Sequence record: NC_049851.1
DNA length: 64,000 nucleotides
Reading direction: 5' to 3' (one strand)
The stretch's first letter is position 1; each line of letters opens with the position of its first letter. A model generated the notes under the pieces. That model made no database searches and had not been told where the DNA came from. It saw only the letters and a list, made by a program, of their open reading frames with translations. Positions 3,538-29,185 of the stretch are shown piece by piece. A program made the position numbers and the translations under genes.

Positions 3538-3624
3538 GGTGTTCCCCTTCGGGTTTGTTGAACGTGCACAAATGATAAAGGCCCCGATTGGGGCCTGTCA
3601 ACAATACCTTAGTGAAATGCTGGG

Positions 3625-3801
3625 TTATACGCGTTCGACGTATTGCCCCGAACGATAGGCGCGCGTTTCCTCTACGCGCCCATAGAATTCCAGATCGAAC
3701 GTTACGATTCCGTTCGCGTCATAGACGAACAGGACAAGGGCCCGCGCCCCGTCGATTTTCAGCGTATCGCCCGCTTGCACGTCCCGCGCTCTTACTTGCA
3801 T
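3625..3801 (-). CDS. hypothetical protein (58 aa, MQVRARDVQAGDTLKIDG...)
   Basis: read by hand; GAGGT RBS; TAA lies inside the 27-bp box. Confidence 0.65.
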   Translation of the reverse strand: MQVRARDVQAGDTLKIDGARALVLFVYDANGIVTFDLEFYGRVEETRAYRSGQYVERV

Positions 3802-3847
3802 GGTGTATCACCTCTAGGTGAATGCGGGGCCGGGCGGCCCCGCATGG

Positions 3848-4492
3848 TTAGATATACTGGCGTTGCTTGTAGCTCAGGGGGCTTGCATACTTCGGGGCCG
3901 GGTCGAGCAGCCAAGTGCGGATTTGATCGGCGCAAGACTTGCGGAACGCAGACCGGAAATTACGCGTGCGCAGCAGCGTAACGCATGCCGGGTATTGATC
4001 GCCCATCGCATCACGCAGAGCCGCCACACGTTCGACCGCGCACCCGATTTCGGCCGCAAGCGCCGCATCGGCCGCCGCTTGCTCTGCTGCCTTGCGCGCG
4101 GCTTCCGCTTCGCGCTGGGCCTGTGCTTCCGCCGCACGCTGGGCTTTCCATGCTTCGTGCGCTGCCTGCACTTCGGGCGTCGCGTCCGGCTTAGAGCCGT
4201 AGCATGGATACGACCAGCCCCGAGTCGTCGCAAAGAGAATGTCTTCGCGACAGCCCTTTTCAGGGTTCCAGACGGCCATATACCAATCGGAATCATCGTA
4301 TCCGTTACGCTCGTAATCGAACAGGCAGAGACCTACATGCGACAGGCTAATGGTTACGTGATTCGATTCCGACATGGCACCGCCATTGTAGGCATACGAG
4401 TGTGCTTCGGCCGCGTCCGGATACCACGGCGTGTAATCGCCTTCCGCGCTGTACACCTTCCCGCCCTTTGCCTCAAGATTGATGATTGCCAT
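3848..4492 (-). CDS. hypothetical phage protein (214 aa)
   Basis: long ORF after promoter 4551; Ala/Glu coiled segment. Confidence 0.8.
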   Translation of the reverse strand: MAIINLEAKGGKVYSAEGDYTPWYPDAAEAHSYAYNGGAMSESNHVTISLSHVGLCLFDYERNGYDDSDWYMAVWNPEKGCREDILFATTRGWSYPCYGSKPDATPEVQAAHEAWKAQRAAEAQAQREAEAARKAAEQAAADAALAAEIGCAVERVAALRDAMGDQYPACVTLLRTRNFRSAFRKSCADQIRTWLLDPAPKYASPLSYKQRQYI

Positions 4493-4583
4493 TTCGTTCC
4501 CCGTCTGGGTTTGTTGAGCATGTACAAATGATAGCGGCCCCGATTGGGGCCGTCAACAATAACCCTTCACTTTATGGGGTTAT

Positions 4584-4787
4584 TCAGTAGGCGAGCAGAT
4601 CGCGCAGCGCATCGCGGTTTTTCGACATATGGTCGATGATCGCGAGCCGTTCGCGTAACCCGATATTGCGGAACGCGGGGCACCCGTCGAGCAGATCGCC
4701 CAGCAAACCGTCCCGATATTCGAGTGCCTTTTCCATGGTGTCGAATTGCTTGCCGCGCGTTACATAGACCCTCTTTTCTTCGATCAC
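4584..4787 (-). CDS. hypothetical protein
   Basis: AGGGGG RBS; stop overlaps the box. Confidence 0.7.
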   Translation of the reverse strand: MIEEKRVYVTRGKQFDTMEKALEYRDGLLGDLLDGCPAFRNIGLRERLAIIDHMSKNRDALRDLLAY

Positions 4788-4803
4788 GATAAATCCCCCT
4801 GTG

Positions 4804-4980
4804 TTATGCGAGCCAGACAGCCAGCGATGCGACGCTGGAAAGCGTGGTACGGGCCGAACGGTGCGCCTTGTGCCACGCAGCGCGAGCCGTGCGCGCCGGG
4901 TGCGCCCAGTTAGCGCGATCCGCGTAGAGTGCGCACGCCAGCTTATAGCGTTCGTCGCGCAATTGTTCGATAGTGTGCAT
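4804..4980 (-). CDS. hypothetical protein (58 aa)
   Basis: read by hand; AAGGA RBS. Confidence 0.5.
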   Translation of the reverse strand: MHTIEQLRDERYKLACALYADRANWAHPARTARAAWHKAHRSARTTLSSVASLAVWLA

Positions 4981-5026
4981 GATGGTGTTTCCTTGTGGCG
5001 GGGCGCACTGCGCCCCCCTGTCTGGT

Positions 5027-5245
5027 TTAGCTGCGATCCATGATGAAGCGCGAGACAGCGCGGGGCGTGTTCAGACGAACCGTTTCGTATTCCGTCCGGA
5101 CAGCCGCGCCGTTATAGACGCGCACGGGGTCTTGCACTTCGATAGAACCGTCCTGCATGGATGCGACCGTGTAGCCGTCACGTTCCAGAATTGCCACGTA
5201 GGGCTTCATTGCGTGGAACAGTTCGATTGCGTTAGCTTGTGGCAT
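5027..5245 (-). CDS. hypothetical protein
   Basis: GGAG RBS after promoter 5305. Confidence 0.7.
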   Translation of the reverse strand: MPQANAIELFHAMKPYVAILERDGYTVASMQDGSIEVQDPVRVYNGAAVRTEYETVRLNTPRAVSRFIMDRS

Positions 5246-5336
5246 GGTGCTGACTCCGTGCGCTGCGTTGAAAGTGATTCCATTATGGGGCGTGTTCGAC
5301 GCCCCGTCAACAGTACCCGACTAAAACGCGGGGTCT

Positions 5337-5501
5337 TTAAACCGCTGCCAGTTCATCCGCCCGGAAGTGACCGCGCACGCCGTAGCGATTTTCGCAGACA
5401 ATGAACTCACCCTCGAAGCCGATAACGCGGATCGTTGCGGCATTGACGCCCGTAAGGATGCGAGCGCGAACAGCTTGATTGAGTGCGAATGCGTGTTTCA
5501 T
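5337..5501 (-). CDS. hypothetical protein
   Basis: start moved to ATG 5501; TAA abuts the box. Confidence 0.65.
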   Translation of the reverse strand: MKHAFALNQAVRARILTGVNAATIRVIGFEGEFIVCENRYGVRGHFRADELAAV

Positions 5502-5576
5502 TTCGTTGTCCTGATTGATTGAGGTATGGGCTAGATTATGACGGGGCTTTCTCACCACGTCAACACCTATTTTCGA

Positions 5577-5855: not shown

Positions 5856-6002
5856 GATGAACTCCGGTTTCTGGTTAGCGGTTCGTCGTGAACCAATGAA
5901 CGTATAGTAACACGCGAAAAGGGGCGTGCGCAATAACCCTATTTTCTGTAGGGTTATTGCGTCACGCCCCCCCTGAAACGGAGTCGTTATTCTGTGCCCG
6001 TC

Positions 6003-6618: not shown

Positions 6619-6627
6619 GCGCCGCCC

Positions 6628-7044: not shown

Positions 7045-7078
7045 GATGTACTCCGGTTCGTTGCGTGGTATGTGGGTG

Positions 7079-7330: not shown

Positions 7331-7382
7331 GATGTACTCCGTTATGTAATCGATGGGGGCCGCGCTAGGCCCCTTGGTTTGG

Positions 7383-7580: not shown

Positions 7581-7666
7581 TTTGCGCCCCTGCGTTTCGT
7601 TGATCGATGGCTCTATTCTGGGGCCCGCGTTTCGGGCTGTCAACAATACCCGACTAAAACGCGGGG

Positions 7667-8368
7667 TTATTTGGTCGGATGCCGGTCGATACAGGCTTGC
7701 GCTGCCTCGTCTACCGTGTCGAACAGGCCCGAATCCTCAACCCAGAATCGCGCGCTGTAACGATAGTTGTCGCCGATAGGCTGAATCGCGAATCCCAGTT
7801 CACTGCACTGCGTAATCAGGCTCTGTGTATGCTGTTCGGCATCGCGCTTGCGTTGCACGTCGAAATGCGCGCGCATCAGTTCCCGAACGAGCCCGGTTCG
7901 CGCGCTGTCCATCGTCTGAAACGGGCCCGCGATGTTACGCTGTGCCGTTACGTCGAACACGTAGAAAGGCGCGTCGCGGCCGTCGCCCTGTAGCGTGCCA
8001 TCGTCGGCCGTGCCGTCGATTACCAGACAGTTACCGTCGGCCGTGTAGCCGGTGCGCGCTTCGTCCAGTTCGCGAGCCTTTGCGCTCGCGCGCTTAACGG
8101 CCGCCCATGCGGTCGGGGCGGGGGCTGCTGCATCTTCCGTCTTCGCGACCGGTTCGGCATCCACGCGCGGCTGATGGTAGCGGCTGACAGCTTCCGCAAC
8201 CTGTGCGGCGTCGATTTCCGACGCGGCGGACACCACGTGACCCTGTTCGATCAATTCGGCCATATAGCAGCAGACAGCCATTTCGCTATCGCCTTGCGGA
8301 TGCGCGGTGCGGCCGATGTAGACGATCCAGTTACCGTGCATGTTCTTGCGTGCGCGAATCAGGGACAT
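7667..8368 (-). CDS. multi-module hypothetical protein (233 aa)
   Basis: GGAG RBS after promoter 8427; TAA inside the box. Confidence 0.8.
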   Translation of the reverse strand: MSLIRARKNMHGNWIVYIGRTAHPQGDSEMAVCCYMAELIEQGHVVSAASEIDAAQVAEAVSRYHQPRVDAEPVAKTEDAAAPAPTAWAAVKRASAKARELDEARTGYTADGNCLVIDGTADDGTLQGDGRDAPFYVFDVTAQRNIAGPFQTMDSARTGLVRELMRAHFDVQRKRDAEQHTQSLITQCSELGFAIQPIGDNYRYSARFWVEDSGLFDTVDEAAQACIDRHPTK

Positions 8369-8458
8369 GATGCTAACTCCGTGTGTTGTGTGTCGATGTG
8401 TGTATTCTGGGGCCTATAGTCGGCCCCGTCAACTATTCCCGAGTAAATCACTCAGGTA

Positions 8459-8674
8459 TCACATAGTGCGTTGCCGTGTGTAGAGCACGCGGTTAATGTC
8501 GTCGCGGATGCACACACGATAGGGGCCGTCGCGTTCCACTATGTAGGCCCGCCACTTGTGAATTACGATCGTTCGCGCGCATCCATAGGTGATCATCTTG
8601 TGTTCACCTTCGTCCGCGATCATTTGCGCGTCCTCTTCCGCCAGCTTGGCGGGGCCGTCGTCGTTCGTGCTCAC
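8459..8674 (-). CDS. hypothetical protein
   Basis: GTG start with GGGGG RBS; stop overlaps the box. Confidence 0.5.
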   Translation of the reverse strand: MSTNDDGPAKLAEEDAQMIADEGEHKMITYGCARTIVIHKWRAYIVERDGPYRVCIRDDINRVLYTRQRTM

Positions 8675-8685
8675 GGTCGCCCCCG

Positions 8686-9697: not shown

Positions 9698-9873
9698 AGC
9701 GTGATATCAGGAAACACGCCCGGGCGTGCGGCTCGAACCTGCACAGCGGAACCGGGGAACATGACACGGCCAAGCCATGCGCCTGCCTCGTCGCCCGAGG
9801 CACAGCGGACAAGGCGCGTGCGCACCACGTTAGAGCCGTCGCGAATCACACAAAACCAGATATCCTTGTCCAT
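9694..9873 (-). CDS. hypothetical protein (59 aa, MDKDIWFCVIRDGSNVVRTR...)
   Basis: read by hand; RBS after promoter 9933; GTGA overlap with the next ORF. Confidence 0.65.
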   Translation of the reverse strand: MDKDIWFCVIRDGSNVVRTRLVRCASGDEAGAWLGRVMFPGSAVQVRAARPGVFPDITL

Positions 9874-10435
9874 CGTCCCTACCCCTTACCCTTCGTTGAC
9901 GGTAACGCTATCCTAATCCAGACAATCCGCCACGTCAACAATAACCCCTCGTTTCAGTCGGGTTTATTTCTGCACAGAAACCCCACACAATCCGGGGTTA
10001 TTCCCGTGCCCGGCTAACCACTCGCAGCACGCTACTTTCTTCATTATAAACACGCGCTACAGCCCCTTAAACGGGCCGCCTGTAGTTTCCCCTACCCATC
10101 AGTCAATCACGCGCACCGGGCCGCCTGAGCGCGTTCTCTGCGTCTATGCGTTCGTCAGGAATGCAGCGCAATGCGGGGCCCGGGCCCGGGCCATTGATCG
10201 GGAATCCTGACGATCCGGGCTCGCGCGATTAGATGATTCGCACTACCGACGAATGCGGTACTTGACGCGCTGCCCCGTCTGTGCCGTGTGCGATGCCCCG
10301 CCCGGGCCCCGCCCCATCCGGTTTTCGTTAGCACAACTAATCGCGCTCGTCAACTATACCCCCTCCCCCCATCCGGTTTTTAGCACCCCCTCCCCCTATC
10401 TGTGGTAGTAAGGTATCCTACCAAAACCCCGTTTT

Positions 10436-10552
10436 CGGGCCCGGGGTTTTTCGTGAAATAAACAGGGGGTCTAATTCGCGTGCGTAAGGTATCCCCCGGA
10501 TGCTGGGTGCGGGCCCGGGGTTTTTCGTGAAATAAACAGGGGGTCTAATTCG
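10436..10552. repeat. two identical 43-bp direct repeats in a non-coding gap
   Basis: CGGGCCCGGGGTTTTTCGTGAAATAAACAGGGGGTCTAATTCG at 10436-10478 and 10510-10552. Confidence 0.9.
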
Positions 10553-10637
10553 TGTGCGGTGCGCGTGTGCCGCGTATAAACGGAAAAGGGGAACCCCTAT
10601 CATGCAGGTTCCCCTATCTGGCGTGCGTGCTGTGTGT

Positions 10638-10934
10638 CTAGTCCGCTGCGCCTGCGTCTACGTGGTGCGATTCCACAAGCGTATGCCCGTGTTCTACTGC
10701 ATAGGCGCGCACCCGCTCGATTACGTGTTCAACGATCCAGCGTTCGGGGCCCTGTATCGTGAGCGTAACCCGGTTAGCCCATTGCTTAGAACGGACGTGC
10801 GCACCACAGGCCCGGGCTTCTGCGTGTACGTGATTCACGAACGCGCGGCGCGCATCCGCGAACGCGTTATCGTTGTCGGATACGCGATAGTGCATGGTCG
10901 CGCTATATGTTGCGGTGATGTTAATCACGATCAT
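10638..10934 (-). CDS. hypothetical protein
   Basis: ATG 10934 with GGGGG RBS overlapping the previous gene. Confidence 0.6.
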   Translation of the reverse strand: MIVINITATYSATMHYRVSDNDNAFADARRAFVNHVHAEARACGAHVRSKQWANRVTLTIQGPERWIVEHVIERVRAYAVEHGHTLVESHHVDAGAAD

Positions 10935-11387: not shown

Positions 11388-11470
11388 GGTCTTGTCCAAT
11401 GGGTTAGTTGATGTGGTGATTATGGGGGCTGGCTGCGCCCCCGTCAACTATACCCGTTTAGAGTGTGGGG

Positions 11471-12475
11471 TTATTCTGCTTTGTTCGCGACGAACGCGAG
11501 GGCCTGTACTTCTGCGGCCTGCACGCGTTTATACTCGGCTTCGCTGACAGCCCGGCCCCCGATCCGGATACGCGCCGGAAACTGGTTGAAAATCTCACCC
11601 CGAACACTCGTATTGATGATGATACGCTGGTTGATTACCACGCGTTGACCTACGGGCGTGCGGCCCGTCAACAGGAATTCGTAACCCGTGATCGATTGGA
11701 AAGCCGGGTCTTTCAGGTCGCCCGCCTTCGACATTACCTTGTGCTCTACGCTGTCACGCACGGCGCGGGCGTAGTCTGCGGCACGGGCGCGAAGGCGTTC
11801 GGCGTTGATCGAACCATCGCCATTCGTGCATGCGCGCAGTGTCGAGGCGTAGAATTTCGACCATGCCTTATCGCGGGCGATGCCAGCCAGCAGGGGCCCG
11901 AATTTTGCGACTGCCTGAGCGTGTCGCGCGCTCACGTAGTCTTCGAATTGTGCGACGAGCGCCGGGCCCTGTGCATCGAGTGCGGCGCGCACCACTTCCG
12001 ACAGAACGGGGGCGGACATGGTGCGTTCCACGTGTGCGCGCTGTGAGGTTGCGGCCCGCGTCTCGCGCTTCGCGATCCGGGCTTTTGCGGCCTTCAACGC
12101 GGCTTCAACCTCAATCCATTCCGCAAACAGGTGCACGGCCGTGCGTGCGATAGCGTGTCGGCCAGCGAGTGCGACGGCCGCCCGGTGCATGCGCTTCACA
12201 CTCGGCAGGTTCGACGCATCATAATACAGGTCTTGCAATTCGTCGGGGCGCGGGAACGCGAGCGCCAGATAGGGGGCGCGCACCGCCCATTCCATCAGGT
12301 TTTCATAGACGGTCGTGAGTTCCGCGCGCATTTCCTTGTAATCGACGGCGCGCATGCTATCGGTGCCGCAAAGCTGGGCGATACGCGAATCGAACGCGTT
12401 GATAGCACGTGCATTGTGCGGACGATCCGACAGCAGAATGCGGGCGAGTGCGGCGCGCGTGTTTTGCAGTTCCAT
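11471..12475 (-). CDS. hypothetical phage protein (334 aa)
   Basis: start moved to ATG 12475 (AAGGGG RBS); TAA inside the box. Confidence 0.85.
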   Translation of the reverse strand: MELQNTRAALARILLSDRPHNARAINAFDSRIAQLCGTDSMRAVDYKEMRAELTTVYENLMEWAVRAPYLALAFPRPDELQDLYYDASNLPSVKRMHRAAVALAGRHAIARTAVHLFAEWIEVEAALKAAKARIAKRETRAATSQRAHVERTMSAPVLSEVVRAALDAQGPALVAQFEDYVSARHAQAVAKFGPLLAGIARDKAWSKFYASTLRACTNGDGSINAERLRARAADYARAVRDSVEHKVMSKAGDLKDPAFQSITGYEFLLTGRTPVGQRVVINQRIIINTSVRGEIFNQFPARIRIGGRAVSEAEYKRVQAAEVQALAFVANKAE

Positions 12476-12707
12476 GGTCTTTCCCCTTCCGGGTTCGTTG
12501 AGCGTGGACAAATAGTAACAGCCCCTTAGAGGGGCCGTCAACAATAACCGACTAAATTAGTCGGTCTTTATCCTGTGCTAACCGTCTTCTGCACGATAGC
12601 CCCGATCCAGTCGGCCGGAATCACGCTGACGGTGCGTGTCACGTCCCCCGCTTCGTCTTCCGATCCGGTCTGTACCGTATGCGTCAGGGGCCGGGGCCCC
12701 CATCCCC

Positions 12708-13217: not shown

Positions 13218-13364
13218 TTTCAAATCTCCGTTTGGTGAGAGTGTGCTACGTGGTTAAGTGGGTGTTGCGTGATTCGTTAAGACAGATTGTAGGGGACTAA
13301 ATTTTGTACGTCAACTAATCCCCTTCAATTTGTGGGGTCTTTTTCGCAGACCCCGGCGCGTTCG

Positions 13365-13622: not shown

Positions 13623-13738
13623 TCCCTAGTTGTGTTGCGTTAATCGATGAAGCAGATTGTAGGGCAATCATTTCCGCCCGTCAACAATACCCCTACAATT
13701 TGCGGGGTCTTTACGGCAGACCCCGGGGCCGGTGCGCG

Positions 13739-14335: not shown

Positions 14336-14446
14336 GATGCTAACTCCGTTTGGTTTGTGCTGCGTTGTGTGAATCGATGTATGAATTATGCCCGCGTCTT
14401 TTTGGCCCGTCAACAGTACCCGAGTATTTTAGTCGGGTATTGTGAC

Positions 14447-14469
14447 AAAAGAAGGGGCCCGTAGGCCCC
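14447..14469 (-). terminator. intrinsic terminator
   Basis: GGGGCC hairpin followed by a T-tract on the minus strand, next to the box. Confidence 0.7.
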
Positions 14470-15006: not shown

Positions 15007-15104
15007 GGTGCGCCCCTCTAGGCTTGGTGTTGCGTTGAAAGTGAGACTATTGTATGCGGGCCCGTGTAGGCCCGTCAACAATAAACCCCTTGCGTGTAGG
15101 GTTA

Positions 15105-15647
15105 TTACAGAACCAGTGTTCCGTTATTGATGAGGTAAGACCCGATTGCGGCAACCCGGCCGCGCGCTTGCGCGTCCTTTCGCAGTTCGTGCAGTTCGTC
15201 GGGTTCCATGCTCGTGAGAATGCGCGCCGCCATGGTTTCGGCCGCGTGCACTTCGCGATCTTCGGATTCTGCGACAGCGCGCAGCATGTCGGCCACTTCT
15301 ACCATGTGCCACTTGGCGCGCAGCACGCCCGCGATATCCTGTTCCGTAATTTCGGGCAGATTAACGAGGTCGAGCGGATCGGCCGTGCATGAGGCAAAAA
15401 GCACGCCGTCGGCCGTGTGCAGGGTGACGCTGCGCAGACTCTGCCCCTTGAGCACGCGCCCGAGCGTGTCGGGCAGGGACGTAACGCAGACCGCATAGAG
15501 CGCGGCGTCCGGGCTCGCGACAATGACGATAGATGAATTCTTGTCCATCGCCTTTTTGAAACCCGTTTGCATCAGGTCAACGCATGCGCCTTCGCCAATC
15601 GAGCGGCCCGCATTGTGAATTTTGATTGCGTGCATGATAGTTCCCAT
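15105..15647 (-). CDS. hypothetical protein
   Basis: after promoter 15694; TAA abuts the box. Confidence 0.75.
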   Translation of the reverse strand: MGTIMHAIKIHNAGRSIGEGACVDLMQTGFKKAMDKNSSIVIVASPDAALYAVCVTSLPDTLGRVLKGQSLRSVTLHTADGVLFASCTADPLDLVNLPEITEQDIAGVLRAKWHMVEVADMLRAVAESEDREVHAAETMAARILTSMEPDELHELRKDAQARGRVAAIGSYLINNGTLVL

Positions 15648-15733
15648 GTGAGTGATGAATCGATGAGTGAATTATGCGCCCTTGTCTTCAGCCCGTCAAC
15701 AATACCTGAGTAAAGCAGTCGGGTATTGGTGCC

Positions 15734-16567: not shown

Positions 16568-16653
16568 CGTTGCACCTGTTTGGTTAGTCGATGGACAAAT
16601 AATAACGGGCCCCGAAAGGCCCGTCAACAATACCCGACTAAATCGCGGGGTCT

Positions 16654-17343
16654 TTACAGCACGTCCTTAAATTCGTCGTTCAGTCGCTTACGCTGGGCGC
16701 GCAGTTTCTCGATATGGTTACGCGTTTCTTCGCGCCAGATACCGGGGGCATTGCGCACGATCCAAAGGTCGCGCACACGCTGTTCCGTTTCTTCGATATC
16801 GGATTCGAGCCGTCGGGCCGCTTGCCATTTCGCGTCGTATTCCCGTTCGTCTTCCGCGTAGACGCACGCATGCGAATCGGCGTCCGCTGCGGCAGCGCGG
16901 TCACTGTCATAGACAGTCGTGAACACGACGTGTCCATCGTTGTCTGACGTGGTGTAACCCGCGAGATAACGGCCGTGCGTCAGGCGCACAAAGAACGGAC
17001 GCGCTACCTCCGTTCCGTCTTCGTCCGTGAACCATCCTTTGTGGCTGACGTAAGTGCGTCCCGAGCGCGGGTTTTCCGTTTCGTCCAGATAGCACACGCG
17101 GCCGGGCAGCGCGTCATCGTCAAATGTCGAATAGATATCGATCTTGCGGCCGTATTCCGTGTTGTAGCCCGCGCGCAGGCCCGAGTCGTTCGACAGGAAA
17201 TTTCCGAACCGGGCCGAACGCCAATCGATGAGTCGGCCGCCCTTCCCAGCGTTCACCTTGGCATTGTGGGATTCCACGTAGCCGCGAAGGTACGCGAGCC
17301 GCTTCCGTGCGCCAATGCGAAGGTTGCGATAGGTAGTGTTCAT
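16654..17343 (-). CDS. hypothetical phage protein (229 aa)
   Basis: after promoter 17411; TAA abuts the box. Confidence 0.8.
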   Translation of the reverse strand: MNTTYRNLRIGARKRLAYLRGYVESHNAKVNAGKGGRLIDWRSARFGNFLSNDSGLRAGYNTEYGRKIDIYSTFDDDALPGRVCYLDETENPRSGRTYVSHKGWFTDEDGTEVARPFFVRLTHGRYLAGYTTSDNDGHVVFTTVYDSDRAAAADADSHACVYAEDEREYDAKWQAARRLESDIEETEQRVRDLWIVRNAPGIWREETRNHIEKLRAQRKRLNDEFKDVL

Positions 17344-17477
17344 AATCGAATCCGTTTAGTTAATCCCGCGTCGCGCGGTATGAAAAGGATTGTACGCGTC
17401 TTATTCCCTGCGTCAACAATAACCCCGCGCAATGAGGGGTTATTGTTGAAGCACTCCGTAGAGTGCGGGCCGCGTCG

Positions 17478-18144: not shown

Positions 18145-18239
18145 GATGTGCCCCGTTAGGCGTTGTCGATGTGTGAAGTATGCCCGGGCCCGCGAGGCGC
18201 GTCAACAGTACCTGAGTATTTTAGTCGGGTATTGCTGCC

Positions 18240-19872: not shown

Positions 19873-19966
19873 GATGGTTCCCTTAGAGAAGGTTTGTTAA
19901 GTAAGTGTGTGTATCATACCGGGTTTAATTTCGTCCGTCAATTAAACCCGTACTAAAATTAGGCTT

Positions 19967-20107
19967 TTATGCTGCCTGCATGCCGCGCACTTGCCGGATT
20001 GCATCGCGCACTTGCTCACGTGCGAACGGGAACCGGCGCAGGTTGCGCAGACCGTAATTGATGCCGATAAATTCGATTGCCGTTTCGATATCGCGGAAGG
20101 TCTTCAT
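19967..20107 (-). CDS. hypothetical protein (46 aa)
   Basis: GGAG RBS; TAA inside the box. Confidence 0.6.
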   Translation of the reverse strand: MKTFRDIETAIEFIGINYGLRNLRRFPFAREQVRDAIRQVRGMQAA

Positions 20108-20564: not shown

Positions 20565-20658
20565 GGTTGCCTCTAGGCGGTTAGTGCTGCGTTGAAAGTG
20601 ATGCTATTGTATGCGGCCCGTTCTAGAGCCGTCAACAATAACCCACTAATTCGAGGGG

Positions 20659-20940
20659 TTATTCTTCGACCCACAAGCTAGGATCGCACGACGTTTCAAT
20701 CCGGAAGTGCGACGCATCGCGATAACGGCGCACAAACAGGCGGCCGTGCTGCGCGTAGGTCATGCCTTCAGTCAGCCATGAAACATGGTGCAAATCGCCC
20801 GGCATCGGGGATTTGAGCGGCCCTGCGTGCGTGACACGAACGGGCGTGAATTCGTCAGGGAACAGCCGCGCATCGTAGCGCGTGCGCCGATAGTAGAGGG
20901 TCTTACCATCCACGTAATCCTGAAAGCATGCGGGTTTCAT
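20659..20940 (-). CDS. hypothetical protein
   Basis: AAGGGG RBS; TAA inside the box. Confidence 0.65.
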   Translation of the reverse strand: MKPACFQDYVDGKTLYYRRTRYDARLFPDEFTPVRVTHAGPLKSPMPGDLHHVSWLTEGMTYAQHGRLFVRRYRDASHFRIETSCDPSLWVEE

Positions 20941-21100: not shown

Positions 21101-21189
21101 TTCGTTCCCCTTCGGGTTCGTTGAATCGATGGACAAATAGTAACAGCCCCTTAGAGGGGCCGTCAACAATAACCACAAATAATTTGTGG

Positions 21190-21438
21190 TTATTCGGTGC
21201 GGAACAGGTGCGCGGGCGCGTCGTGCTCGTACCAGTAACGGGCATCGCGTAGCGTGTCATGACTGCCGACCGCGCGGCCGTCGATGCTGACGAGCCATCG
21301 ATTACGCGTAAGCGTCACCATACGCGCATGGGGCGGCCCGTCCGGGCTGTAGTTATCGCGTACCTGTACCAGTGCGCCGGACGGCGTGCAGGCCGCATAC
21401 AGCCCGGCCTCTACACGTTTCAGGGGCGGCCGGTTCAT
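21190..21438 (-). CDS. hypothetical protein
   Basis: ATGA overlap; TAA inside the box. Confidence 0.6.
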   Translation of the reverse strand: MNRPPLKRVEAGLYAACTPSGALVQVRDNYSPDGPPHARMVTLTRNRWLVSIDGRAVGSHDTLRDARYWYEHDAPAHLFRTE

Positions 21439-21929: not shown

Positions 21930-21942
21930 GGTGTCAAATCCC

Positions 21943-22635
21943 TTAACGGATCATGCGATGTTGGACGGTCACGAATGCTTGCCGGATCGCCCCGGCTTCG
22001 GTTTCCCACTCGTTAGCGGGCATCGGAAAACACGGATGCGACGCGAGCCACAGACCGGACGGCATGCACACGATATCGAACCCGAACGCGGCTACCACTT
22101 CCGCCTGAGACATGGTGTTAAGATCGCGTTGCATCACGCCCCCCTTGGCTTTGCGCGGTGCCCGGCCTGCGAGCATATACACGGTTTCGCGGTACTTGGC
22201 GCGGGCCTTTTTCAGTTCGTTCAGTGCGAACGATTCGGACAAAAGCGGCTCGCCTTCGTCTGCGTTCACTGCCGACAGGATAAGCGCGCCTGCACGGTGT
22301 TCAAGCCTTACGCGAACGCCCGCGCGTTCCACCTGTTCCACGTAGCCGCACGTCAGCGCGTACAGCGTAAGCGAGCCGTCCGCGTTTTTAAGCAATACGT
22401 CGGGGCGCACGCGTGCAACGCGTTGTTTGCCATGACGGCGCGCGAGCCACACGCGATAATGCCCCTCGTCGGTGCGGCCGTCGATATAGCGACGCGCGGC
22501 GTCGAGCGTCATAAACTCCCCATGCGTGACGCCTACAACAGTTCGCGCGTCGCCGTGCATGACGACAAAACCCTCGCGCGTGCTGCCGGTCAAAACGTCG
22601 TCAACGATAAAGAAACAGTTATGGATTTCGATCAT
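21943..22635 (-). CDS. hypothetical protein (230 aa)
   Basis: AAGGGG RBS after promoter 22704. Confidence 0.75.
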   Translation of the reverse strand: MIEIHNCFFIVDDVLTGSTREGFVVMHGDARTVVGVTHGEFMTLDAARRYIDGRTDEGHYRVWLARRHGKQRVARVRPDVLLKNADGSLTLYALTCGYVEQVERAGVRVRLEHRAGALILSAVNADEGEPLLSESFALNELKKARAKYRETVYMLAGRAPRKAKGGVMQRDLNTMSQAEVVAAFGFDIVCMPSGLWLASHPCFPMPANEWETEAGAIRQAFVTVQHRMIR

Positions 22636-22732
22636 GGTCAGCCCCTTTAGGCCGGTCTTTACTGCGTTGAAAGTGATTCTATTCTATGGGGCCTGCTGCC
22701 CCGTGTCAACAATAACCCCAGACTTTACTGGG

Positions 22733-23089
22733 TTATTCGTTGTCCATCATCCCGAGCCGGGCCCGGATCATTGACAGGCGTTCCGATACGGGCACGGCAC
22801 GGCCGCCGCCCAGACGAACCCATCCCGCGCCAGACGGGCACGCGTCAATGTCATGCACCCCGGAATAAGCGGCGCAAATGTCGGCCGCACTGTTAGCCTG
22901 TAGCAGCGTATAACCGGCCGTGCGCGCGTGCTGCGCAGCATCCCGGCCTGACTCCCACACGCGAGCATGCGCCCGGCCCGTCTTCTGTTCACCCTCCCCT
23001 ACAAACTGCGCGGGGCCCTGCGCGACGACACGCAGACGATAGCGCGTCGTGCCTTCGTGTTTCTGACGCATCACATACACTTGTTGCAT
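22733..23089 (-). CDS. hypothetical protein
   Basis: after promoter 23148; TAA inside the box. Confidence 0.7.
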   Translation of the reverse strand: MQQVYVMRQKHEGTTRYRLRVVAQGPAQFVGEGEQKTGRAHARVWESGRDAAQHARTAGYTLLQANSAADICAAYSGVHDIDACPSGAGWVRLGGGRAVPVSERLSMIRARLGMMDNE

Positions 23090-23186
23090 ACCCTTAAAAC
23101 TCCCGTTCGTGAATCGATGAGTGCAGTATGTGCGCGTGTGCCCGTACCGTCAACAGTACCAGACTAATTAACTCAGGTATTAGGGC

Positions 23187-23639: not shown

Positions 23640-23760
23640 GGTGTTTACTCTGCTGTTTGGTTAAGGTGTTACCAGTATAGATGGGAGAATTCCCTGCGTC
23701 AAGAATAACCCCGCATAGTGTAGGGATTATTCTTGACGGGGCCCGAAAGGGCCCGGGCCG

Positions 23761-24150
23761 TTATTCGGCGTCGTCTTCCTCGTCGGCCGTTTCGGTCGCT
23801 TGTTCCACGTCGGGCACTTCCGACGTGCGCCCGAGCGATTCAGCCAGTTCGCGGAACCATACGGCGTCGCACCCGTCCATATCCGTATATTCGGCCGCCA
23901 GTTCCGCAAACGTGCCTTCACGCCCAGCGTAAGGCGACGTGTAGAACGATTCCAGCGCGCCATCGCGCAAGATCGCCGCTTGAAAATCGGCGTTCGTCAG
24001 GAATACGAGCCCGCTATGCGTGTTGAACGCCGCTTGTACCGCTTCGGTGCTGAAGTCTTCGGGCAGGCCGCCATCGTTCCATGCTTGTAGGATCGCGATG
24101 AGTTCATCACGTTCGCGACGGCCCATGTTTGCCATGTTGGTAAGCGACAT
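23761..24150 (-). CDS. acidic hypothetical protein
   Basis: AAGGA RBS after promoter 24207. Confidence 0.75.
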   Translation of the reverse strand: MSLTNMANMGRRERDELIAILQAWNDGGLPEDFSTEAVQAAFNTHSGLVFLTNADFQAAILRDGALESFYTSPYAGREGTFAELAAEYTDMDGCDAVWFRELAESLGRTSEVPDVEQATETADEEDDAE

Positions 24151-24237
24151 TCGTTTGATTCCTTGTTCGTTCAGAGAGATTACATTGTGCCGGGTAGTGT
24201 TCTCTCTGTCAACAATACCCGAGTGCGGCGCGGGGTC

Positions 24238-24612
24238 TTACTTCGTCAACGCGCCCGACAGGCTTTTGACGCATGCGCCGTAAGCGGGCTCGCGTGCATC
24301 GTCGGGGCTCGCGCCCTTGAATGCGGCGCTGCTGTAAATCAGGGCCGCATTACCCTTCATCAGATCGACAAGCGGACGCGCGACGCCCGCAAACGTGCGT
24401 TCGATATCGGCCTGAGTTTCCGCGAGCGTCACCCCGCTATCACGTGCGCGAACCGACAAAACCGCAACGTCAGCAACGCCGTTACACGTCTGCGAAATGT
24501 TCGCCTTTTCTTCCGCCGTGAGCGGCGCAGCCTGCGCCGGAACCCCAGCCCCGCACGATGCGGCAGTCGCGAGCGCAGCGAACGCGACTGCGGAAACGGT
24601 ACGTTTGAACAT
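24238..24612 (-). CDS. putative exported protein
   Basis: signal-peptide-like MFKRTVSAVAFAALATAASCGAGVPAQA; two further Cys. Confidence 0.7.
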   Translation of the reverse strand: MFKRTVSAVAFAALATAASCGAGVPAQAAPLTAEEKANISQTCNGVADVAVLSVRARDSGVTLAETQADIERTFAGVARPLVDLMKGNAALIYSSAAFKGASPDDAREPAYGACVKSLSGALTK

Positions 24613-24693
24613 GCTTGATTCTCCGGTTATGCGTCTGTTGAAAGTGAGTCTATTGTATGCGGGCCCGTGTAGGCCCGTCAACAATAAACCCCT

Positions 24694-25050
24694 TTACCCT
24701 AGGGTCTTCGCGATCCGACGCGCCCAGCGTCGAGCATAGCCCGCGCGTCGGCATCCGTGCGGATGCGTCGGCCCCGTGCCCTGCCCCAGACAATACAGAT
24801 AGGCGCGAAGGGCTGCATTGATGCTTTCCGGGGTTGCGCCCAGTTCACGCGCAAGATTTTTGCGCCTCAGTCTGAGCAACGCCATAAGGCTGTCTGCCTC
24901 ATACGTGTAACGTTCGTGTTTCAGGCCCGCATGCGCCATGATGCACGAATCGATTGAGACACGGGCGCGCGGTTGCATAGCCGCCGCCCAGCCCGGAACC
25001 GGGGCCTTTCGTTGTCGCCAATATTCGGCGTGTTCGCCTGTCACGATCAT
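24694..25050 (-). CDS. basic hypothetical protein
   Basis: ATGA overlap; runs into the box. Confidence 0.6.
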   Translation of the reverse strand: MIVTGEHAEYWRQRKAPVPGWAAAMQPRARVSIDSCIMAHAGLKHERYTYEADSLMALLRLRRKNLARELGATPESINAALRAYLYCLGQGTGPTHPHGCRRAGYARRWARRIAKTLG

Positions 25051-25343: not shown

Positions 25344-25430
25344 TTCGTTCCCCTTCCGGGTTCGTTGAGCGTGAAACCAGTATAGACGGGCGCGCGGCGC
25401 ACGTCAACAATAACCCCGTGCTCTATGGGG

Positions 25431-25853
25431 TTAAATCAAAATCATTTCCGTGTAACCCAGCGTCCGGGCAATTGCCAGCAGCGCATCATTACCCGCGCCC
25501 TGTTCGCACGACTCAAACGCGATTGGTGCGCCCGCGTCGTCGCGTATATCGATCCCTGCCGACACTAGGGCCCGGTCGAACGCGAGCCCGAACGATTCAC
25601 GCCCCGCGCTCGTCTTCGCCACGCCGTAACCTGACGTGGTAGCGGCCCCGCAACGAACCCACAGCGACGCATAGAGGTTCGTTGCGGACGTGCTGCGCGA
25701 TGCCCAGTAACGCAATTCGCACACGTGTTCAAGCTTACCCGTTACCGGGTTAAGGGCAACGAGGGAAACGGTGCGGATGCGTTCCTTCGTCCCGTCGTGC
25801 TGCTGCGCGTTATCCTGTTCACCCTTAAACGTTACTTGCATACGTTGCCTCAT
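25431..25853 (-). CDS. hypothetical phage protein
   Basis: ATGA overlap; TAA inside the box. Confidence 0.7.
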   Translation of the reverse strand: MRQRMQVTFKGEQDNAQQHDGTKERIRTVSLVALNPVTGKLEHVCELRYWASRSTSATNLYASLWVRCGAATTSGYGVAKTSAGRESFGLAFDRALVSAGIDIRDDAGAPIAFESCEQGAGNDALLAIARTLGYTEMILI

Positions 25854-26353: not shown

Positions 26354-26451
26354 TTGGTGCCCCTTTAGGCGTCGTGATTGGATGACTGAATTATGCGCGG
26401 GCCCGTCTGGCGTGTCAACAATAACCCCAAAATTTTTATGGTTATTCAGGC

Positions 26452-26476
26452 AAAGAAAAAGCCCCGGCTGGGGCTT
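26452..26476 (-). terminator. intrinsic terminator
   Basis: AGCCCC-AGCC-GGGGCT followed by TTTTCTTT on the minus strand. Confidence 0.7.
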
Positions 26477-27301: not shown

Positions 27302-27786
27302 TATGCGACGAGCCGCTTAACGGGTTCAACGCTGCGCGGGTGATAAACCCAGCGCAGTTCAGCCAGCAAGGGCGCGTATTCTTCCGGGGTTGCCAGCTTC
27401 AAATCGCGGCCCAGACTGCGCGACACTTCCCCATGCTGCCCCGTGTGCATGTAGGACATCACGTTACCCGGGTTGCAGTCTTTCGCGCTGTTACAGAAAA
27501 ACGCGATTACGTAACCCTCGCGAAACTTGCGGAACACGACACGCAACGCGGGCGGCGCAAACTTCGCGGCCCCGTAGCGCTGCGCGTCTTCGGACAGGGC
27601 GCGCACGCCCGAGGGGTCATGTGCATCCCGCGAGCCGTGAACGTCGACCAGATCGCCGCTGCGCTTATCGAATTGAAACGTGATCGGAACGCGGGGGCCA
27701 AACCCGGGCCATTTGCGCGCGAACGCTTCAACGTCTGCGGTCGTGCACTGCACGGTAAAGAATGCCCCATTATCATATGCTCGCAT
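27301..27786 (-). CDS. two-module hypothetical protein (VVFRKF...YMHTGQH motif)
   Basis: GAGG RBS after promoter 27851. Confidence 0.75.
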   Translation of the reverse strand: MRAYDNGAFFTVQCTTADVEAFARKWPGFGPRVPITFQFDKRSGDLVDVHGSRDAHDPSGVRALSEDAQRYGAAKFAPPALRVVFRKFREGYVIAFFCNSAKDCNPGNVMSYMHTGQHGEVSRSLGRDLKLATPEEYAPLLAELRWVYHPRSVEPVKRLVA

Positions 27787-27882
27787 GGTTGCCTCTAGGC
27801 GGTTGTGCTGCTGTTGAAAGTGAAACCAGTATAGGACGGGGCCGCCGCCCCGTCAACAATACCAGACTACCGCGAGGGGTCT

Positions 27883-28254
27883 TTATTCCGTGCCCCGCAA
27901 GCGACGTACAATTTCCGCGTGCGACAGGCCCGACATAAGACGGTCAATTTCCGCTTGCTCGTCCGCCTGCCGTCGCTCGTCTTCTGCTACCTGCCTAGCG
28001 AGTTCTGCGCGCCACTCTTTCAGGGCCCGCGCGCCCTTTTCCGTGCTGCGCGGATCAACCGACAGATAGAGCGTGACTTCGCGCCCCTCCCGGTCAACGA
28101 AAACGGGCGTGCCGCTATTTTTCACCACTACCGTGAAATGCGACTGAACCAGACGGTTTACGGTGTCGGCATCGATAGCCCCGCCAAACGATCCGCCCAC
28201 AACCTTCCGCGTGTTGTCGCTGTAGAGGCGCGTGTGATAGCTGATATTGCGCAT
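27883..28254 (-). CDS. hypothetical protein
   Basis: after promoter 28311; TAA abuts the box. Confidence 0.75.
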   Translation of the reverse strand: MRNISYHTRLYSDNTRKVVGGSFGGAIDADTVNRLVQSHFTVVVKNSGTPVFVDREGREVTLYLSVDPRSTEKGARALKEWRAELARQVAEDERRQADEQAEIDRLMSGLSHAEIVRRLRGTE

Positions 28255-28331
28255 GTCAAACCCTGTTGGTGCGTTGAAAGTGATACCAGTATAGGGGCGG
28301 CGGGCCGCCCCGTCAACAGTATCCGATTAAT

Positions 28332-28676
28332 TTAGTCGGGTTTGTCGTCCTGCACTTGTGCGCCCGGCCGCGCCAGCTTTTCCAGCTTGGCAAGCAACGA
28401 AACAGCGTCCTTAACGTAGCAGGTGCACGCGGGCCGCTTCGCCTCATACTCTGCTACTGCCTGAGCATGCGCCGCCCGGTCTCCGTCCTTAACACGGCCG
28501 CCCGGCCCCCGCTTAGGGCCGCCCCCGAAAATCTGTTGAGCGTGTCTGTTGTGAACGGCAACCGCGCAGCTATAGGCGTGCATCGGATGCCGGATGAGGG
28601 GCCCGAAAATCGCGAGCACGTCCCGCGCTAAATCGGCTTGCCCGTCGTCGTATGCTTGATTGTATGCGTCCTGCAT
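28332..28676 (-). CDS. hypothetical protein
   Basis: GAGGGG RBS. Confidence 0.7.
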   Translation of the reverse strand: MQDAYNQAYDDGQADLARDVLAIFGPLIRHPMHAYSCAVAVHNRHAQQIFGGGPKRGPGGRVKDGDRAAHAQAVAEYEAKRPACTCYVKDAVSLLAKLEKLARPGAQVQDDKPD

Positions 28677-28687
28677 GGTGTTTCCCC

Positions 28688-28912
28688 TCAGTGATCGCGT
28701 TTAACGCTAGTGACGTTGCCGTTATGCTTGCGCACTTCCCAATTGATGCCGTAGTGGCTGAACCCGGTAACACGGTGCGCGCCCGCGTATCGGCCTTCCG
28801 CCACGTCGAACGAATGATCTTTCGTGATCGTGCCGTAACGCCTGCATTCGGCCGCTACCTCGTCAAGACTGCCTGCCTTGAATGCCGTGATGAGTTCTGC
28901 TTTGGTCAACAT
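28688..28912 (-). CDS. hypothetical protein
   Basis: first ORF after promoter 28968. Confidence 0.7.
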   Translation of the reverse strand: MLTKAELITAFKAGSLDEVAAECRRYGTITKDHSFDVAEGRYAGAHRVTGFSHYGINWEVRKHNGNVTSVKRDH

Positions 28913-28999
28913 GGTTTGTCGTTCGGTTCGTTAGAGTGACGCCATTGTATAGGGCAAGTGGGCGCGCGTGCAATACCCCTAAAAAGTTTTTGGTTTTTG

Positions 29000-29027
29000 T
29001 TGACGCGGCCGGGGAAGCGTGTAGAAT
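29000..29027 (+). promoter_or_regulatory. sigma70 promoter (rightward 1)
   Basis: TTGACG-N16-TAGAAT; shares a box with leftward promoter 28968. Confidence 0.7.
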
Positions 29028-29128
29028 GGGAACCGGTGAGCAACACGGGCAAACGCAGCCGCGACGCGGTGGGGAACCCGGAGCCCGGCCCCTGCCCGGT
29101 CGCGCAAACGTTTGCGCCGGGTGTCCGG

Positions 29129-29185
29129 AGTACCCGACAAAAACGCTAGGGTACTATTGACGCGACCGCGAATAGGGCGCACAAT
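29129..29185 (+). promoter_or_regulatory. 27-bp box plus sigma70 promoter (rightward 2)
   Basis: AGTACCC-N13-GGGTACT, then TTGACG-N17-CACAAT. Confidence 0.75.

What the first reader, a model, noticed from the sequence alone, without database searches (positions are those of the whole stretch)
3603..29155. Fixed-length 27-bp box with conserved ends and a free centre: operator for an unknown early regulator
In every copy counted the box is exactly 27 bp and, except at 5932, sits 1 nt upstream of the -35 box. Examples: 4558-4584 AATAACCC-N11-GGGTTATT; 5932-5958; 17418-17444; 21168-21194 (perfect 13-bp arms); 29129-29155. Half-sites vary among AATAACCC, AATACCCG, AGTACCCG and AAAGACCC, and the two halves often do not pair perfectly. 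Length is therefore conserved more tightly than pairing, which fits a dimeric protein reading half-sites about two helical turns apart at the UP-element position. The sigma70 promoters in the right half (32035, 61075, 63341) lack the box, so it defines a regulon. A tandem extra box lies at 9976-10002.
Basis: partly seen in the sequence, partly recalled or inferred. Interest (0 to 1): 0.75.

Follow-up and report, generated by a model that had tools for sequence, protein, structure and literature searches.

The report
Dyad box on phage early promoters
A 27-bp two-fold-symmetric DNA box sits directly against the -35 element of some 35 early promoters of the Burkholderia jumbo phage BcepSauron, as one module of a shuffling promoter cassette, and looks more like a protein docking site than an RNA hairpin, though no binding protein is known.

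Summary
The window is bases 1-64000 of Burkholderia phage BcepSauron, a 262.6-kb RSL1-like jumbo phage. The box is real and under-counted. There are 34 copies, all between 1987 and 29155, and none elsewhere in the genome. Thirty-two of them lie 1 nt upstream of a near-consensus sigma70 -35 element. The half-sites (AATAMCC, and GGKTATT on the other arm) are about as conserved as promoter elements, while the 13-bp centre is nearly free. "Exactly 27 bp" holds for the conserved end motifs. By dyad symmetry alone the best length ranges from 25 to 29.

The box is one module of a ~120-bp cassette: box, -35, spacer, -10, leader, ribosome-binding site. The cassette behaves like the PeSL promoter-terminator cassettes of T4-like phages, including a chimeric cassette that deletes an ORFan in the sister phage BcepSaruman.

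Most cassettes carry a separate strong GC hairpin, so the box is not the terminator. Its own hairpins are weak, show no G-U excess and give no consensus fold. Two boxes sit between divergent promoters, where no transcript enters.

The best reading is a sequence-specific double-stranded DNA site for a dimeric protein that modulates the early regulon. No regulator was found. An RNA-polymerase upstream-contact role and a weak-attenuator role remain open.

The parts
1987..2013 (.). box shared by divergent promoters: minus-strand -35 at 1985, plus-strand extended -10 at 2033-2041
   Evidence: weight-matrix score 30.0
3603..3629 (-). box of the promoter at 3601; weak dyad
   Evidence: -0.2 kcal/mol; 1-nt indel relative to Saruman
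4558..4584 (-). box of the promoter at 4556, family A
5312..5338 (-). box of the promoter at 5310, family B (AAAGACC left arm)
5932..5958 (-). box forming the tip of a 26-bp stem that is followed by TTTT; the -35 is degenerate
   Evidence: -43.5 kcal/mol over 5905-5980
7645..7671 (-). box of the promoter at 7643, hybrid arms (left arm A, right arm C)
8434..8460 (-). box of the promoter at 8432, divergent family C
9940..9966 (-). box of the promoter at 9938; the dyad fits best at 29 nt (9940-9968)
9976..10002 (-). orphan tandem box with no adjacent -35, inside a longer hairpin
   Evidence: -22.3 kcal/mol
11449..11475 (-). box of the promoter at 11447
   Evidence: the centre is fully replaced in Saruman while the arms are kept
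12543..12569 (-). box of the promoter at 12541, near-perfect 12-bp arms
   Evidence: a Sauron/Saruman breakpoint lies at the box/-35 border
13316..13342 (-). box of the promoter at 13314, family B
13686..13712 (-). box of the promoter at 13684, family B; dyad fits best at 26 nt
14415..14441 (-). box of the promoter at 14413, family C; a canonical terminator lies at 14454-14469 just upstream
15080..15106 (-). box of the promoter at 15078; right-hand partner in the Saruman chimera
15701..15727 (-). box of the promoter at 15699, family C, terminator upstream; left-hand partner in the Saruman chimera
16629..16655 (-). box of the promoter at 16627, family B
17418..17444 (-). box of the promoter at 17416, family A, 9-bp arms
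18207..18233 (-). box of the promoter at 18205, family C, terminator upstream
19943..19969 (-). degenerate box of the promoter at 19941
   Evidence: score 14.5, the lowest of the 34
20637..20663 (-). box of the promoter at 20635, family A
21168..21194 (-). box of the promoter at 21166, perfect 13-bp arms
22711..22737 (-). box of the promoter at 22709, family A
23155..23181 (-). box of the promoter at 23153, family C, terminator upstream
23704..23730 (-). box of the promoter at 23702; the dyad fits best at 28 nt (23704-23731)
   Evidence: 1-nt indel and a compensatory change relative to Saruman
24214..24240 (-). box of the promoter at 24212, family B-like
24683..24709 (-). box of the promoter at 24681; the upstream ORF ends at box position 14
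25409..25435 (-). box of the promoter at 25407
26420..26446 (-). box of the promoter at 26418, family A, with a terminator at 26459-26476 upstream
27858..27884 (-). box of the promoter at 27856, family B
28318..28344 (-). box of the promoter at 28316, family C-like
28972..28998 (.). box shared by divergent promoters: minus-strand -10 near 28945, plus-strand -35 at 29000
29129..29155 (+). box of the plus-strand promoter at 29157
4528..4556 (-). example of the core promoter: TTGACG, a 17-nt spacer that is itself a GC hairpin, then TATCAT
   Evidence: -16 kcal/mol

Best explanation
The box is the upstream module of a repeated early-promoter cassette of about 120 bp in the ORFan-rich left 29 kb of BcepSauron. 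The cassette runs: 27-bp dyad box at about -63 to -37, 1 nt, near-consensus sigma70 -35, a 16-18-nt spacer that is often a GC hairpin, -10, a conserved leader, ribosome-binding site, ATG.

The box is most likely read as double-stranded DNA by a two-fold-symmetric (dimeric) protein. That protein would recognise the half-site AATAMCC on both arms. The half-site centres lie about 20 bp apart, so both face the same side of the helix, and the A/T-rich centre is free to bend. From that position, abutting the -35 element and the docking zone of the RNA-polymerase alpha C-terminal domains, the protein would modulate about 35 host-polymerase early promoters together.

The core promoters need no activator, and early transcripts of the related phage Matilda decline with time. 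I therefore infer that the effect is early shut-off, but the sign of the effect is not shown.

What is shown: the anatomy, distribution and conservation pattern of the box, its separateness from the cassette's terminator hairpin, and cassette recombination. What is inferred: that a protein binds, which protein, and the direction of the effect.
For: - The arms are conserved for identity (0.70 and 0.75), almost as well as the -35 (0.88). The centre (0.37) and spacer (0.35) are near random (0.26).
- Information content is symmetric: about 9.8 bits on the left arm and 10.3 bits on the right.
- In 26 orthologous cassettes of BcepSaruman the arms differ at 8/364 positions and the centre at 22/338, p=0.005.
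- The gap to the -35 and the 27-nt register are fixed although the spacer varies from 16 to 18 nt.
- Box hairpins are weak, with a mean of -6.7 kcal/mol and seven copies weaker than -4. They fold no better on the sense strand, and G-T (27) does not exceed A-C (33).
- RNAalifold finds no consensus structure.
- 19 of 33 cassettes hold a -9 to -18 kcal/mol GC hairpin in the spacer. The five cassettes with a canonical terminator upstream of the box all have weak spacers. The cassette's terminator is therefore a different element.
- Two boxes are shared by back-to-back divergent promoters, where no transcript enters.
- The box is absent from every sigma70-like promoter outside 2-29 kb. The composite is at chance level in 185,579 bacterial and archaeal species genomes, with no Burkholderia hit.
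- Genes of the corresponding terminal regions of Matilda peak at the earliest time point and then fall.
Against: - No binding protein is known.
- The 65 early-region proteins are ORFans. The only helix-turn-helix hint, gp061, is below threshold and could not be modelled.
- The copies are paralogues that recombine, so fixed length and shared ends partly reflect common descent and gene conversion.
- In-register pairing (68.9%) and copy-specific covariation exceed both shuffled and slid controls. Two copies are extended into strong hairpins. Hairpin potential is therefore not irrelevant.
- Freshwater phage contigs show clear terminator hairpins abutting the -35 in the same way.
- There are no data on transcript ends or on protein binding.
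Confidence: 0.45

Rival explanations
1. The box is an upstream promoter element read by host RNA polymerase itself. Three A/T patches, centred near -61, -50 and -39 and spaced about 11 bp apart, are separated by G/C clamps. They would bend the DNA and give the alpha C-terminal domains minor-groove contacts, making these early promoters very strong. No dedicated regulator would be needed.
For: - The box occupies the UP-element zone.
- The A/T fraction peaks at box positions 1-5, 12-17 and 24-27, with G/C at 6-8 and 20-22.
- The arm next to the promoter is slightly closer to consensus than the distal arm.
Against: - The best-conserved positions are C6, C7, G21 and G22, which alpha-CTD contacts would not require.
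- The distal arm at -63 to -57 is as conserved as the proximal arm.
- Other sigma70-like promoters of the same phage use an A-rich AAAAGNA stretch instead.
- The composite is not found in bacterial genomes above chance.
Confidence: 0.2
2. The box works as a hairpin in RNA, or in single-stranded DNA. It would be a deliberately weak, possibly bidirectional terminator, attenuator or insulator, or a 3' stabiliser, with an A-tract, a short C/G stem and a U-tract that runs into the -35. Its fixed length would be inherited from one ancestor.
For: - The layout matches this phage's real terminators: A-rich stretch, C run, loop, G run, T-rich stretch.
- In-register pairing is 68.9%, against 36-50% in slid registers, and covariation exceeds all 500 shuffles.
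- Families A and C differ by complementary changes at pairs 5/23, 8/20 and 9/19.
- Mean z-score against shuffles is -2.9.
- The copies at 5932 and 9976 are extended into strong hairpins of -43.5 and -22.3 kcal/mol.
- The upstream ORF's stop codon lies in or at the box in 18 of 30 cassettes.
- Freshwater phage cassettes have true terminators in this position.
Against: - Energies are weak and there is no consensus fold.
- There is no G-U excess and no strand preference.
- 31% of in-register cells are unpaired, and hybrid arms pair only with bulges.
- A separate strong GC hairpin is present in most cassettes. In five of them it lies upstream of the box, so little transcription would reach the box.
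- Two boxes lie between divergent promoters.
- The spacer hairpins in the same cassettes show what a structure-only constraint looks like here: free sequence, variable size and strong folding energy.
Confidence: 0.2
3. The box has no biochemical function of its own. It is a homology patch kept uniform by frequent recombination and gene conversion among cassettes that shuffle ORFans.
For: - The Saruman cassette at 14903 is a chimera of the Sauron cassettes at 15699 and 15078, and it removes gp041.
- Four of six Sauron/Saruman breakpoints lie at cassettes.
- Box families are mosaics of left and right arms.
Against: Gene conversion would homogenise the centre and the spacer too, yet these are near random while the arms are conserved. 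Between the orthologous cassettes the arms change three times more slowly than the centre.
Confidence: 0.1

Closest known systems
PeSL (promoter-early stem-loop) cassettes of T4-like phages (Arbiol et al. 2010, PMC2839356; Comeau et al. 2014, PMC4122927)
   Same: - A composite cassette of about 100 bp with a consensus sigma70 early promoter.
[quoted passage not shown] - A Shine-Dalgarno sequence and start codon at the 3' end.
- Dense arrays in ORFan-rich hyperplastic regions.
- Recombination between cassettes creates indels between sister phages.
   Different: - A different phage lineage (RSL1-like jumbo phage) and a GC-rich Burkholderia host.
- The upstream region here is not merely A/T-rich. 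It is a conserved 27-bp dyad with fixed register and G/C clamps, which the PeSL papers do not describe.
- Terminator activity and mini-circles are untested here.
Phage phi29 regulator p4 and its sites at the early A2b/A2c and late A3 promoters (from my own knowledge, not checked against a paper here)
   Same: An imperfect inverted repeat of similar overall size, with short conserved ends about two helical turns apart and a free centre. It is bound by a dimer on one face of bent DNA next to RNA polymerase, and it switches early promoters off.
   Different: - No p4 homologue was detected.
- There are 34 sites rather than a handful.
- The half-site sequence is unrelated.
- Binding is untested here.
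UP elements of strong sigma70 promoters, for example rrnB P1 and T4 early promoters (from my own knowledge)
   Same: Location of about -60 to -38, and A/T patches in helical phase.
   Different: Conserved CC/GG, dyad symmetry and T-rich rather than A-rich proximal part. The A/T patches sit about 3 bp closer to the -35 than the canonical subsites.
Intrinsic (bidirectional) terminators abutting a downstream promoter
   Same: An A-tract, a C/G stem and a T-tract that runs into the -35. True examples are seen at window 61075 and 32063 and in freshwater phage contigs.
   Different: Short stems with loops of 9-13 nt, weak folding energy, fixed length, conserved sequence, and a separate real terminator hairpin in the same cassette.

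Membership tests
PeSL-like mobile promoter-terminator cassette | strong sigma70-consensus early promoter | tested here: met
   TTGAC[AG], 16-18 nt, [TC]AnnnT in about 33 cassettes. 22 and 20 promoter-like sites were found against 8.4 and 7.1 expected.
PeSL-like mobile promoter-terminator cassette | stable G/C-rich stem-loop within or beside the promoter | tested here: met
   Spacer-region folds of -9 to -18 kcal/mol in 19 of 33 cassettes, mostly GC hairpins in the spacer. Canonical terminators upstream in 5 more. Fold prediction only.
PeSL-like mobile promoter-terminator cassette | arrays in an ORFan-rich plastic region | tested here: met
   65 ORFs give 3 Pfam hits, and PHROG hits are all of unknown function. 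31 of 61 minus-strand genes have their own cassette.
PeSL-like mobile promoter-terminator cassette | recombination between cassettes makes indels between close relatives | tested here: met
   Chimeric Saruman cassette that deletes gp041. Four of six breakpoints lie at cassettes.
PeSL-like mobile promoter-terminator cassette | demonstrated promoter and terminator activity, and mini-circles | not testable with these tools
   Needs reporter assays and inverse PCR.
Operator of a dimeric DNA-binding regulator | dyad-symmetric half-sites conserved for sequence identity | tested here: met
   Half-site AATAMCC on both arms, with about 10 bits of information each. Arm identity 0.70-0.75.
Operator of a dimeric DNA-binding regulator | fixed register relative to the regulated promoter | tested here: met
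   1-nt gap to TTGAC in 32 of 34 copies.
Operator of a dimeric DNA-binding regulator | a cognate protein that binds the site | tested here: inconclusive
   No credible DNA-binding domain in the early region. gp061 matches HTH_Crp_2 at 16.7 bits against a cut-off of 27, and its model has pLDDT 44.5. Annotated regulators elsewhere give no Pfam hit.
Operator of a dimeric DNA-binding regulator | regulatory effect on transcription | not testable with these tools
   Needs reporter assays or in vitro transcription.
Intrinsic terminator | stable G/C-rich stem with a short loop | tested here: not met
   Mean -6.7 kcal/mol, and seven copies weaker than -4. Only 3 of 34 pass the simple terminator scan on the sense strand. 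No consensus fold.
Intrinsic terminator | U-rich tract directly after the stem | tested here: inconclusive
   The sequence TTATTGTT follows the G run, but it is itself the paired right arm plus the start of the -35.
Intrinsic terminator | lies at the 3' end of a transcription unit | tested here: inconclusive
   True for most copies. Two copies lie between divergent promoters and five lie downstream of a real terminator.
UP element | A/T-rich DNA at about -60 to -38 | tested here: inconclusive
   The position matches. The composition is three A/T patches interrupted by invariant CC and GG.
UP element | alpha-CTD-dependent stimulation | not testable with these tools
   Needs in vitro transcription with polymerase lacking the alpha C-terminal domain.

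The most novel reading that the evidence does not exclude
An unrecognised protein family, phage-encoded or delivered by the virion, binds 34 dyad operators. Through them it switches the whole host-polymerase early regulon of an RSL1-like jumbo phage. This would resemble phi29 p4 on a genome-wide scale. The operator travels with a mobile promoter cassette, so every newly captured ORFan is wired into the switch automatically.
Probability: 0.35. Interest if true: 0.65.

Novelty: new variant of a known kind. Interest (0 to 1): 0.5.

Why it matters
Early gene control in jumbo phages that rely on host RNA polymerase is poorly understood, and almost all the early genes here are ORFans. A single conserved site on about 35 promoters gives a direct way to find whatever times early expression, because the box can serve as bait in a pull-down. 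The finding also extends the idea of a mobile promoter-terminator cassette beyond T4-like phages, to a GC-rich Burkholderia phage lineage. Finally, it provides a compact and apparently portable strong-promoter module for Burkholderia genetics.

Tried and rejected
- **Terminator reading.** Rejected as the main role on folding energies, the lack of a consensus fold, the separate GC hairpins and the divergent-promoter copies.
- **Cassette in other phages.** A blastn search with one whole cassette found only BcepSauron and BcepSaruman. An early protein, gp036, has no RSL1, BCSR5 or Motura homologue.
- **Exact 15-mer scan of viral contigs.** This gave chance singletons apart from BcepSauron itself.
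- **Degenerate box plus -35 scans.**
  - Viral contigs returned, beyond BcepSauron itself, only a few unrelated singletons, at least some from the freshwater phage group.
  - Metagenomes returned 22 hits. Eight are one orthologous cassette in freshwater phages, whose other cassettes carry ordinary variable terminators.
  - Genome contigs returned 9 hits at chance level, none from Burkholderia.
  - One GC-rich bacterial hit, L121, looks accidental.
- **BCSR5.** I scanned 150 of the 227 kb of this Burkholderia relative (73% capsid identity). It has no box and no dense sigma70 cluster, so it could not test host-factor against phage-factor reading.
- **Regulator hunt.**
  - Pfam and PHROGs searches on 65 early proteins found nothing usable.
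  - Pfam on five annotated transcription proteins gave only a weak sigma region 2 hit.
  - gp061 has only its Saruman orthologue, and its single-sequence model is unusable, so I ran no fold search.
- **Known host-factor consensus sites (Fis, IHF, CRP).** Compared from memory, none fits. C-N13-G is the reverse of the G-N13-C that Fis needs.
- **Integron attC analogy** (imperfect palindromes at cassette 3' ends). Considered and set aside: there is no integrase, the length is fixed, and every cassette has its own promoter.
- **tRNA and Rfam searches** of the region were empty.
- **Literature.** No accessible paper describes these boxes.

Full report
**Identity and context.** The window is bases 1-64000 of Burkholderia phage BcepSauron (NC_049851.1, 262,653 bp, genus Sarumanvirus), at 99.9-100% identity. 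Its sister phage BcepSaruman is about 97% identical in this region. A 2026 preprint places these phages with Ralstonia phage RSL1 and far from the nucleus-forming phiKZ group. It mentions no promoter motif. Genes between 1.1 and 29 kb are small, lie almost all on the minus strand, and are ORFans. Sixty-five proteins give three Pfam hits, and their PHROG matches all have unknown function.

**The observation.** The strict pattern with up to 3 mismatches gives 16 hits against 0.04 expected. Read on the minus strand, each copy has the form AATAACCCC, nine free bases, GGGGTTATT, one base, then TTGACG, a 16-18-nt spacer and TAnAAT.

Anchoring on the promoter pattern raises the count to 33 promoter-linked boxes plus one orphan tandem copy. 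A weight matrix built from these copies recovers the same 34 loci, all between 1987 and 29155. It adds only two near-threshold hits in the whole genome, whereas shuffled genomes give 1-4. Dozens of sigma70-like promoters elsewhere lack the box, including those at 32063, 61075 and 63369. They carry either an A-rich AAAAGNA stretch or the T-tract of a terminator.

Two nuances apply to the "exactly 27 bp" claim. The conserved end motifs align without gaps at 27 nt in all copies. Judged by self-complementarity alone, 27 is the unique best length in 18 of 33 copies and ties for best in 8. It is 25, 26, 28 or 29 in the other 7. Two boxes also differ by a 1-nt indel between the two phages.

**Anatomy.** Box positions 1-7 (AATAACC) and 21-27 (GGKTATT) carry about 10 bits of information each and are mirror images. 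Positions 6, 7, 21 and 22 are C, C, G and G in 29-33 of 34 copies. Positions 12-17 are A/T-rich, and the rest of the centre is nearly free.

Three sequence families exist, and many copies combine a left arm of one family with a right arm of another:
- Family A: AATAACCCC paired with GGGGTTATT.
- Family C: AATACCCGA paired with TCGGGTACT.
- Family B: left arm AAAGACCCC.

The box is one module of a cassette that continues through the promoter, a conserved leader and a ribosome-binding site to the ATG, which lies about 60-75 nt after the -35. Thirty-one of 61 minus-strand genes in the region have their own cassette. In 18 of 30 cassettes the stop codon of the upstream ORF lies at or inside the box, often as the TAA of AATAA.

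**Hairpin or DNA site?** Some evidence favours a hairpin. Pairing in register is 68.9%, against 36-50% in slid registers and 63.5% in shuffles. Families A and C differ by complementary changes at three pairs. The balance of tests, however, goes against a purely structural role:
- Mean folding energy is only -6.7 kcal/mol, and seven copies are weaker than -4.
- The sense strand folds no better than the antisense strand.
- G-T mismatches (27) do not exceed A-C mismatches (33), as they would in a selected RNA stem.
- RNAalifold returns no consensus pair.

The same cassettes also contain a control for what a structure-only constraint looks like. Nineteen of 33 spacer regions fold at -9 to -18 kcal/mol, most as GC hairpins inside the -35/-10 spacer whose sequences are almost unrelated to each other (identity 0.35). 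The five cassettes with weak spacers at 14413, 15699, 18205, 23153 and 26418 instead carry a canonical terminator plus T-tract a few bases upstream of the box. This complementarity has a hypergeometric probability of about 0.008 (my arithmetic). The cassette's terminator or attenuator is therefore a different element. The box keeps its sequence and register whether it lies before or after that element.

Two boxes (1987-2013 and 28972-28998) are each flanked by two divergent promoters. No transcript enters them, and a symmetric site can serve both sides.

Two copies point the other way. The box at 5932 is the tip of a -43.5 kcal/mol hairpin followed by TTTT, and the orphan at 9976 is also extended into a longer stem. 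Hairpin potential can evidently be exploited.

**Evolution.** In 26 syntenic cassettes of BcepSaruman, the numbers of differing positions are as follows:

| Cassette part | Differences |
|---|---|
| -35 | 0/182 |
| -10 | 1/156 |
| Box arms | 8/364 |
| Box centre | 22/338 |
| Spacer | 20/442 |

The centre changes faster than the arms at p=0.005. The changes are spread over positions 8-18 and are not confined to an apical loop.

Cassettes also recombine. The Saruman cassette at 14903 joins the terminator tail, box and -35 of the Sauron 15699 cassette to the spacer end, -10 and leader of the 15078 cassette, and this removes gp041. Four of the six breakpoints between the two phages lie at cassettes. 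This is the behaviour described for PeSL cassettes of T4-like phages, which also combine a sigma70 early promoter, an A/T-rich upstream region and a G/C stem-loop, most often between -35 and -10.

**Relatives.** No other phage record shares the cassette. The degenerate box plus -35 pattern is at chance level in 185,579 species genomes, with no Burkholderia hit. It is found in one group of freshwater phage contigs, but the other cassettes of those contigs carry ordinary terminators of variable size abutting the -35. The layout "hairpin, T-tract, one base, -35" therefore recurs, and may be where the box came from. The fixed, sequence-conserved dyad is specific to Sarumanvirus as far as the data reach. 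BCSR5, a Burkholderia relative, shows no box in the 150 kb I scanned.

**Mechanism.** I commit to a double-stranded DNA site for a dimeric protein. The half-sites lie about two helical turns apart on one face, with a bendable A/T-rich centre, and the site abuts the -35 and alpha-CTD zone. It would tie about 35 early promoters into one regulon.

Because the core promoters are near consensus, and the homologous early genes of Matilda decline after the first time point, shut-off is the more likely effect. This is inference. No protein was identified.

My confidences are:
- Protein site: 0.45.
- Direct RNA-polymerase or UP-like reading: 0.2.
- Weak attenuator or insulator hairpin: 0.2.
- Pure recombination homology: 0.1.

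**Novelty.** The cassette is a new instance of a known kind (PeSL-like) in a new phage lineage. The conserved dyad module at the UP position is a variant not described in the PeSL papers or in the accessible literature on these phages.

Noticed in passing
window 28912-30204: This 1.3-kb stretch has no annotated gene. It holds four tandem plus-strand sigma70-like promoters, with -35 elements at 29000, 29157, 29261 and 29377. An ATG lies 7 nt after the -10 of two of them. That gives possible leaderless mini-ORFs at 29193-29264 (23 aa) and 29297-29380 (27 aa), each ending in the TGA inside the next promoter's TTGAC. There is no tRNA or Rfam match.
   Followed up: partly
window, -35/-10 spacers, e.g. 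4535-4552, 12516-12540, 16603-16626, 21141-21165: In 19 of 33 cassettes the -35-to-+5 region folds at -9 to -18 kcal/mol, in most as a G/C-rich hairpin in the spacer followed by the T-rich -10 region. It is the likely terminator or attenuator for the upstream gene. This feature is mutually exclusive with a canonical terminator placed upstream of the box.
   Followed up: partly
window 5905-5980: A 26-bp stem of -43.5 kcal/mol followed by TTTTCG has the 5932 box as its tip. It lies next to a ~290-bp segment (gp022) that is present in Sauron and absent from Saruman.
   Followed up: partly
window 15080-15727 compared with L105:14844-14949: BcepSaruman lacks gp041 and carries one chimeric cassette made from the two Sauron cassettes that flank that gene. 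Other Sauron/Saruman breakpoints lie at 12546, 28960 and near 9861-9889, also at cassettes.
   Followed up: yes
window, stop codons at box positions -1 to +3 (e.g. 7667, 11471, 20659, 21190, 22733, 25431): The upstream ORF often ends in the TAA of the box's AATAA arm. Two ORFs read as far as box positions 11 and 14.
   Followed up: partly
L001-L006 (whole genome), e.g. 93882, 100207, 219370, 223693: Sigma70-like promoters outside the early region carry an A-rich AAAAGNA stretch directly before g-TTGAC, which resembles a proximal UP subsite.
   Followed up: no
window 15761-17343, 21435-22635, 23761-24150: The deposited product names 'replication factor', 'transposase', 'tail tape measure protein', 'glycosyltransferase' and 'serine/threonine kinase' get no Pfam support.
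   Followed up: partly
L109, L123, L107, L118 (freshwater metagenome contigs, one of 222 kb): An unrelated low-GC phage group has early-type cassettes: a terminator hairpin, a T-tract, one base, then TTGACA, 17 nt and TATAAT. One of these cassettes happens to match the 27-nt box pattern exactly.
   Followed up: partly
window 9873-10638: This 765-bp stretch has no annotated gene. It contains the tandem boxes and a terminator-like hairpin at 10422-10451.
   Followed up: no
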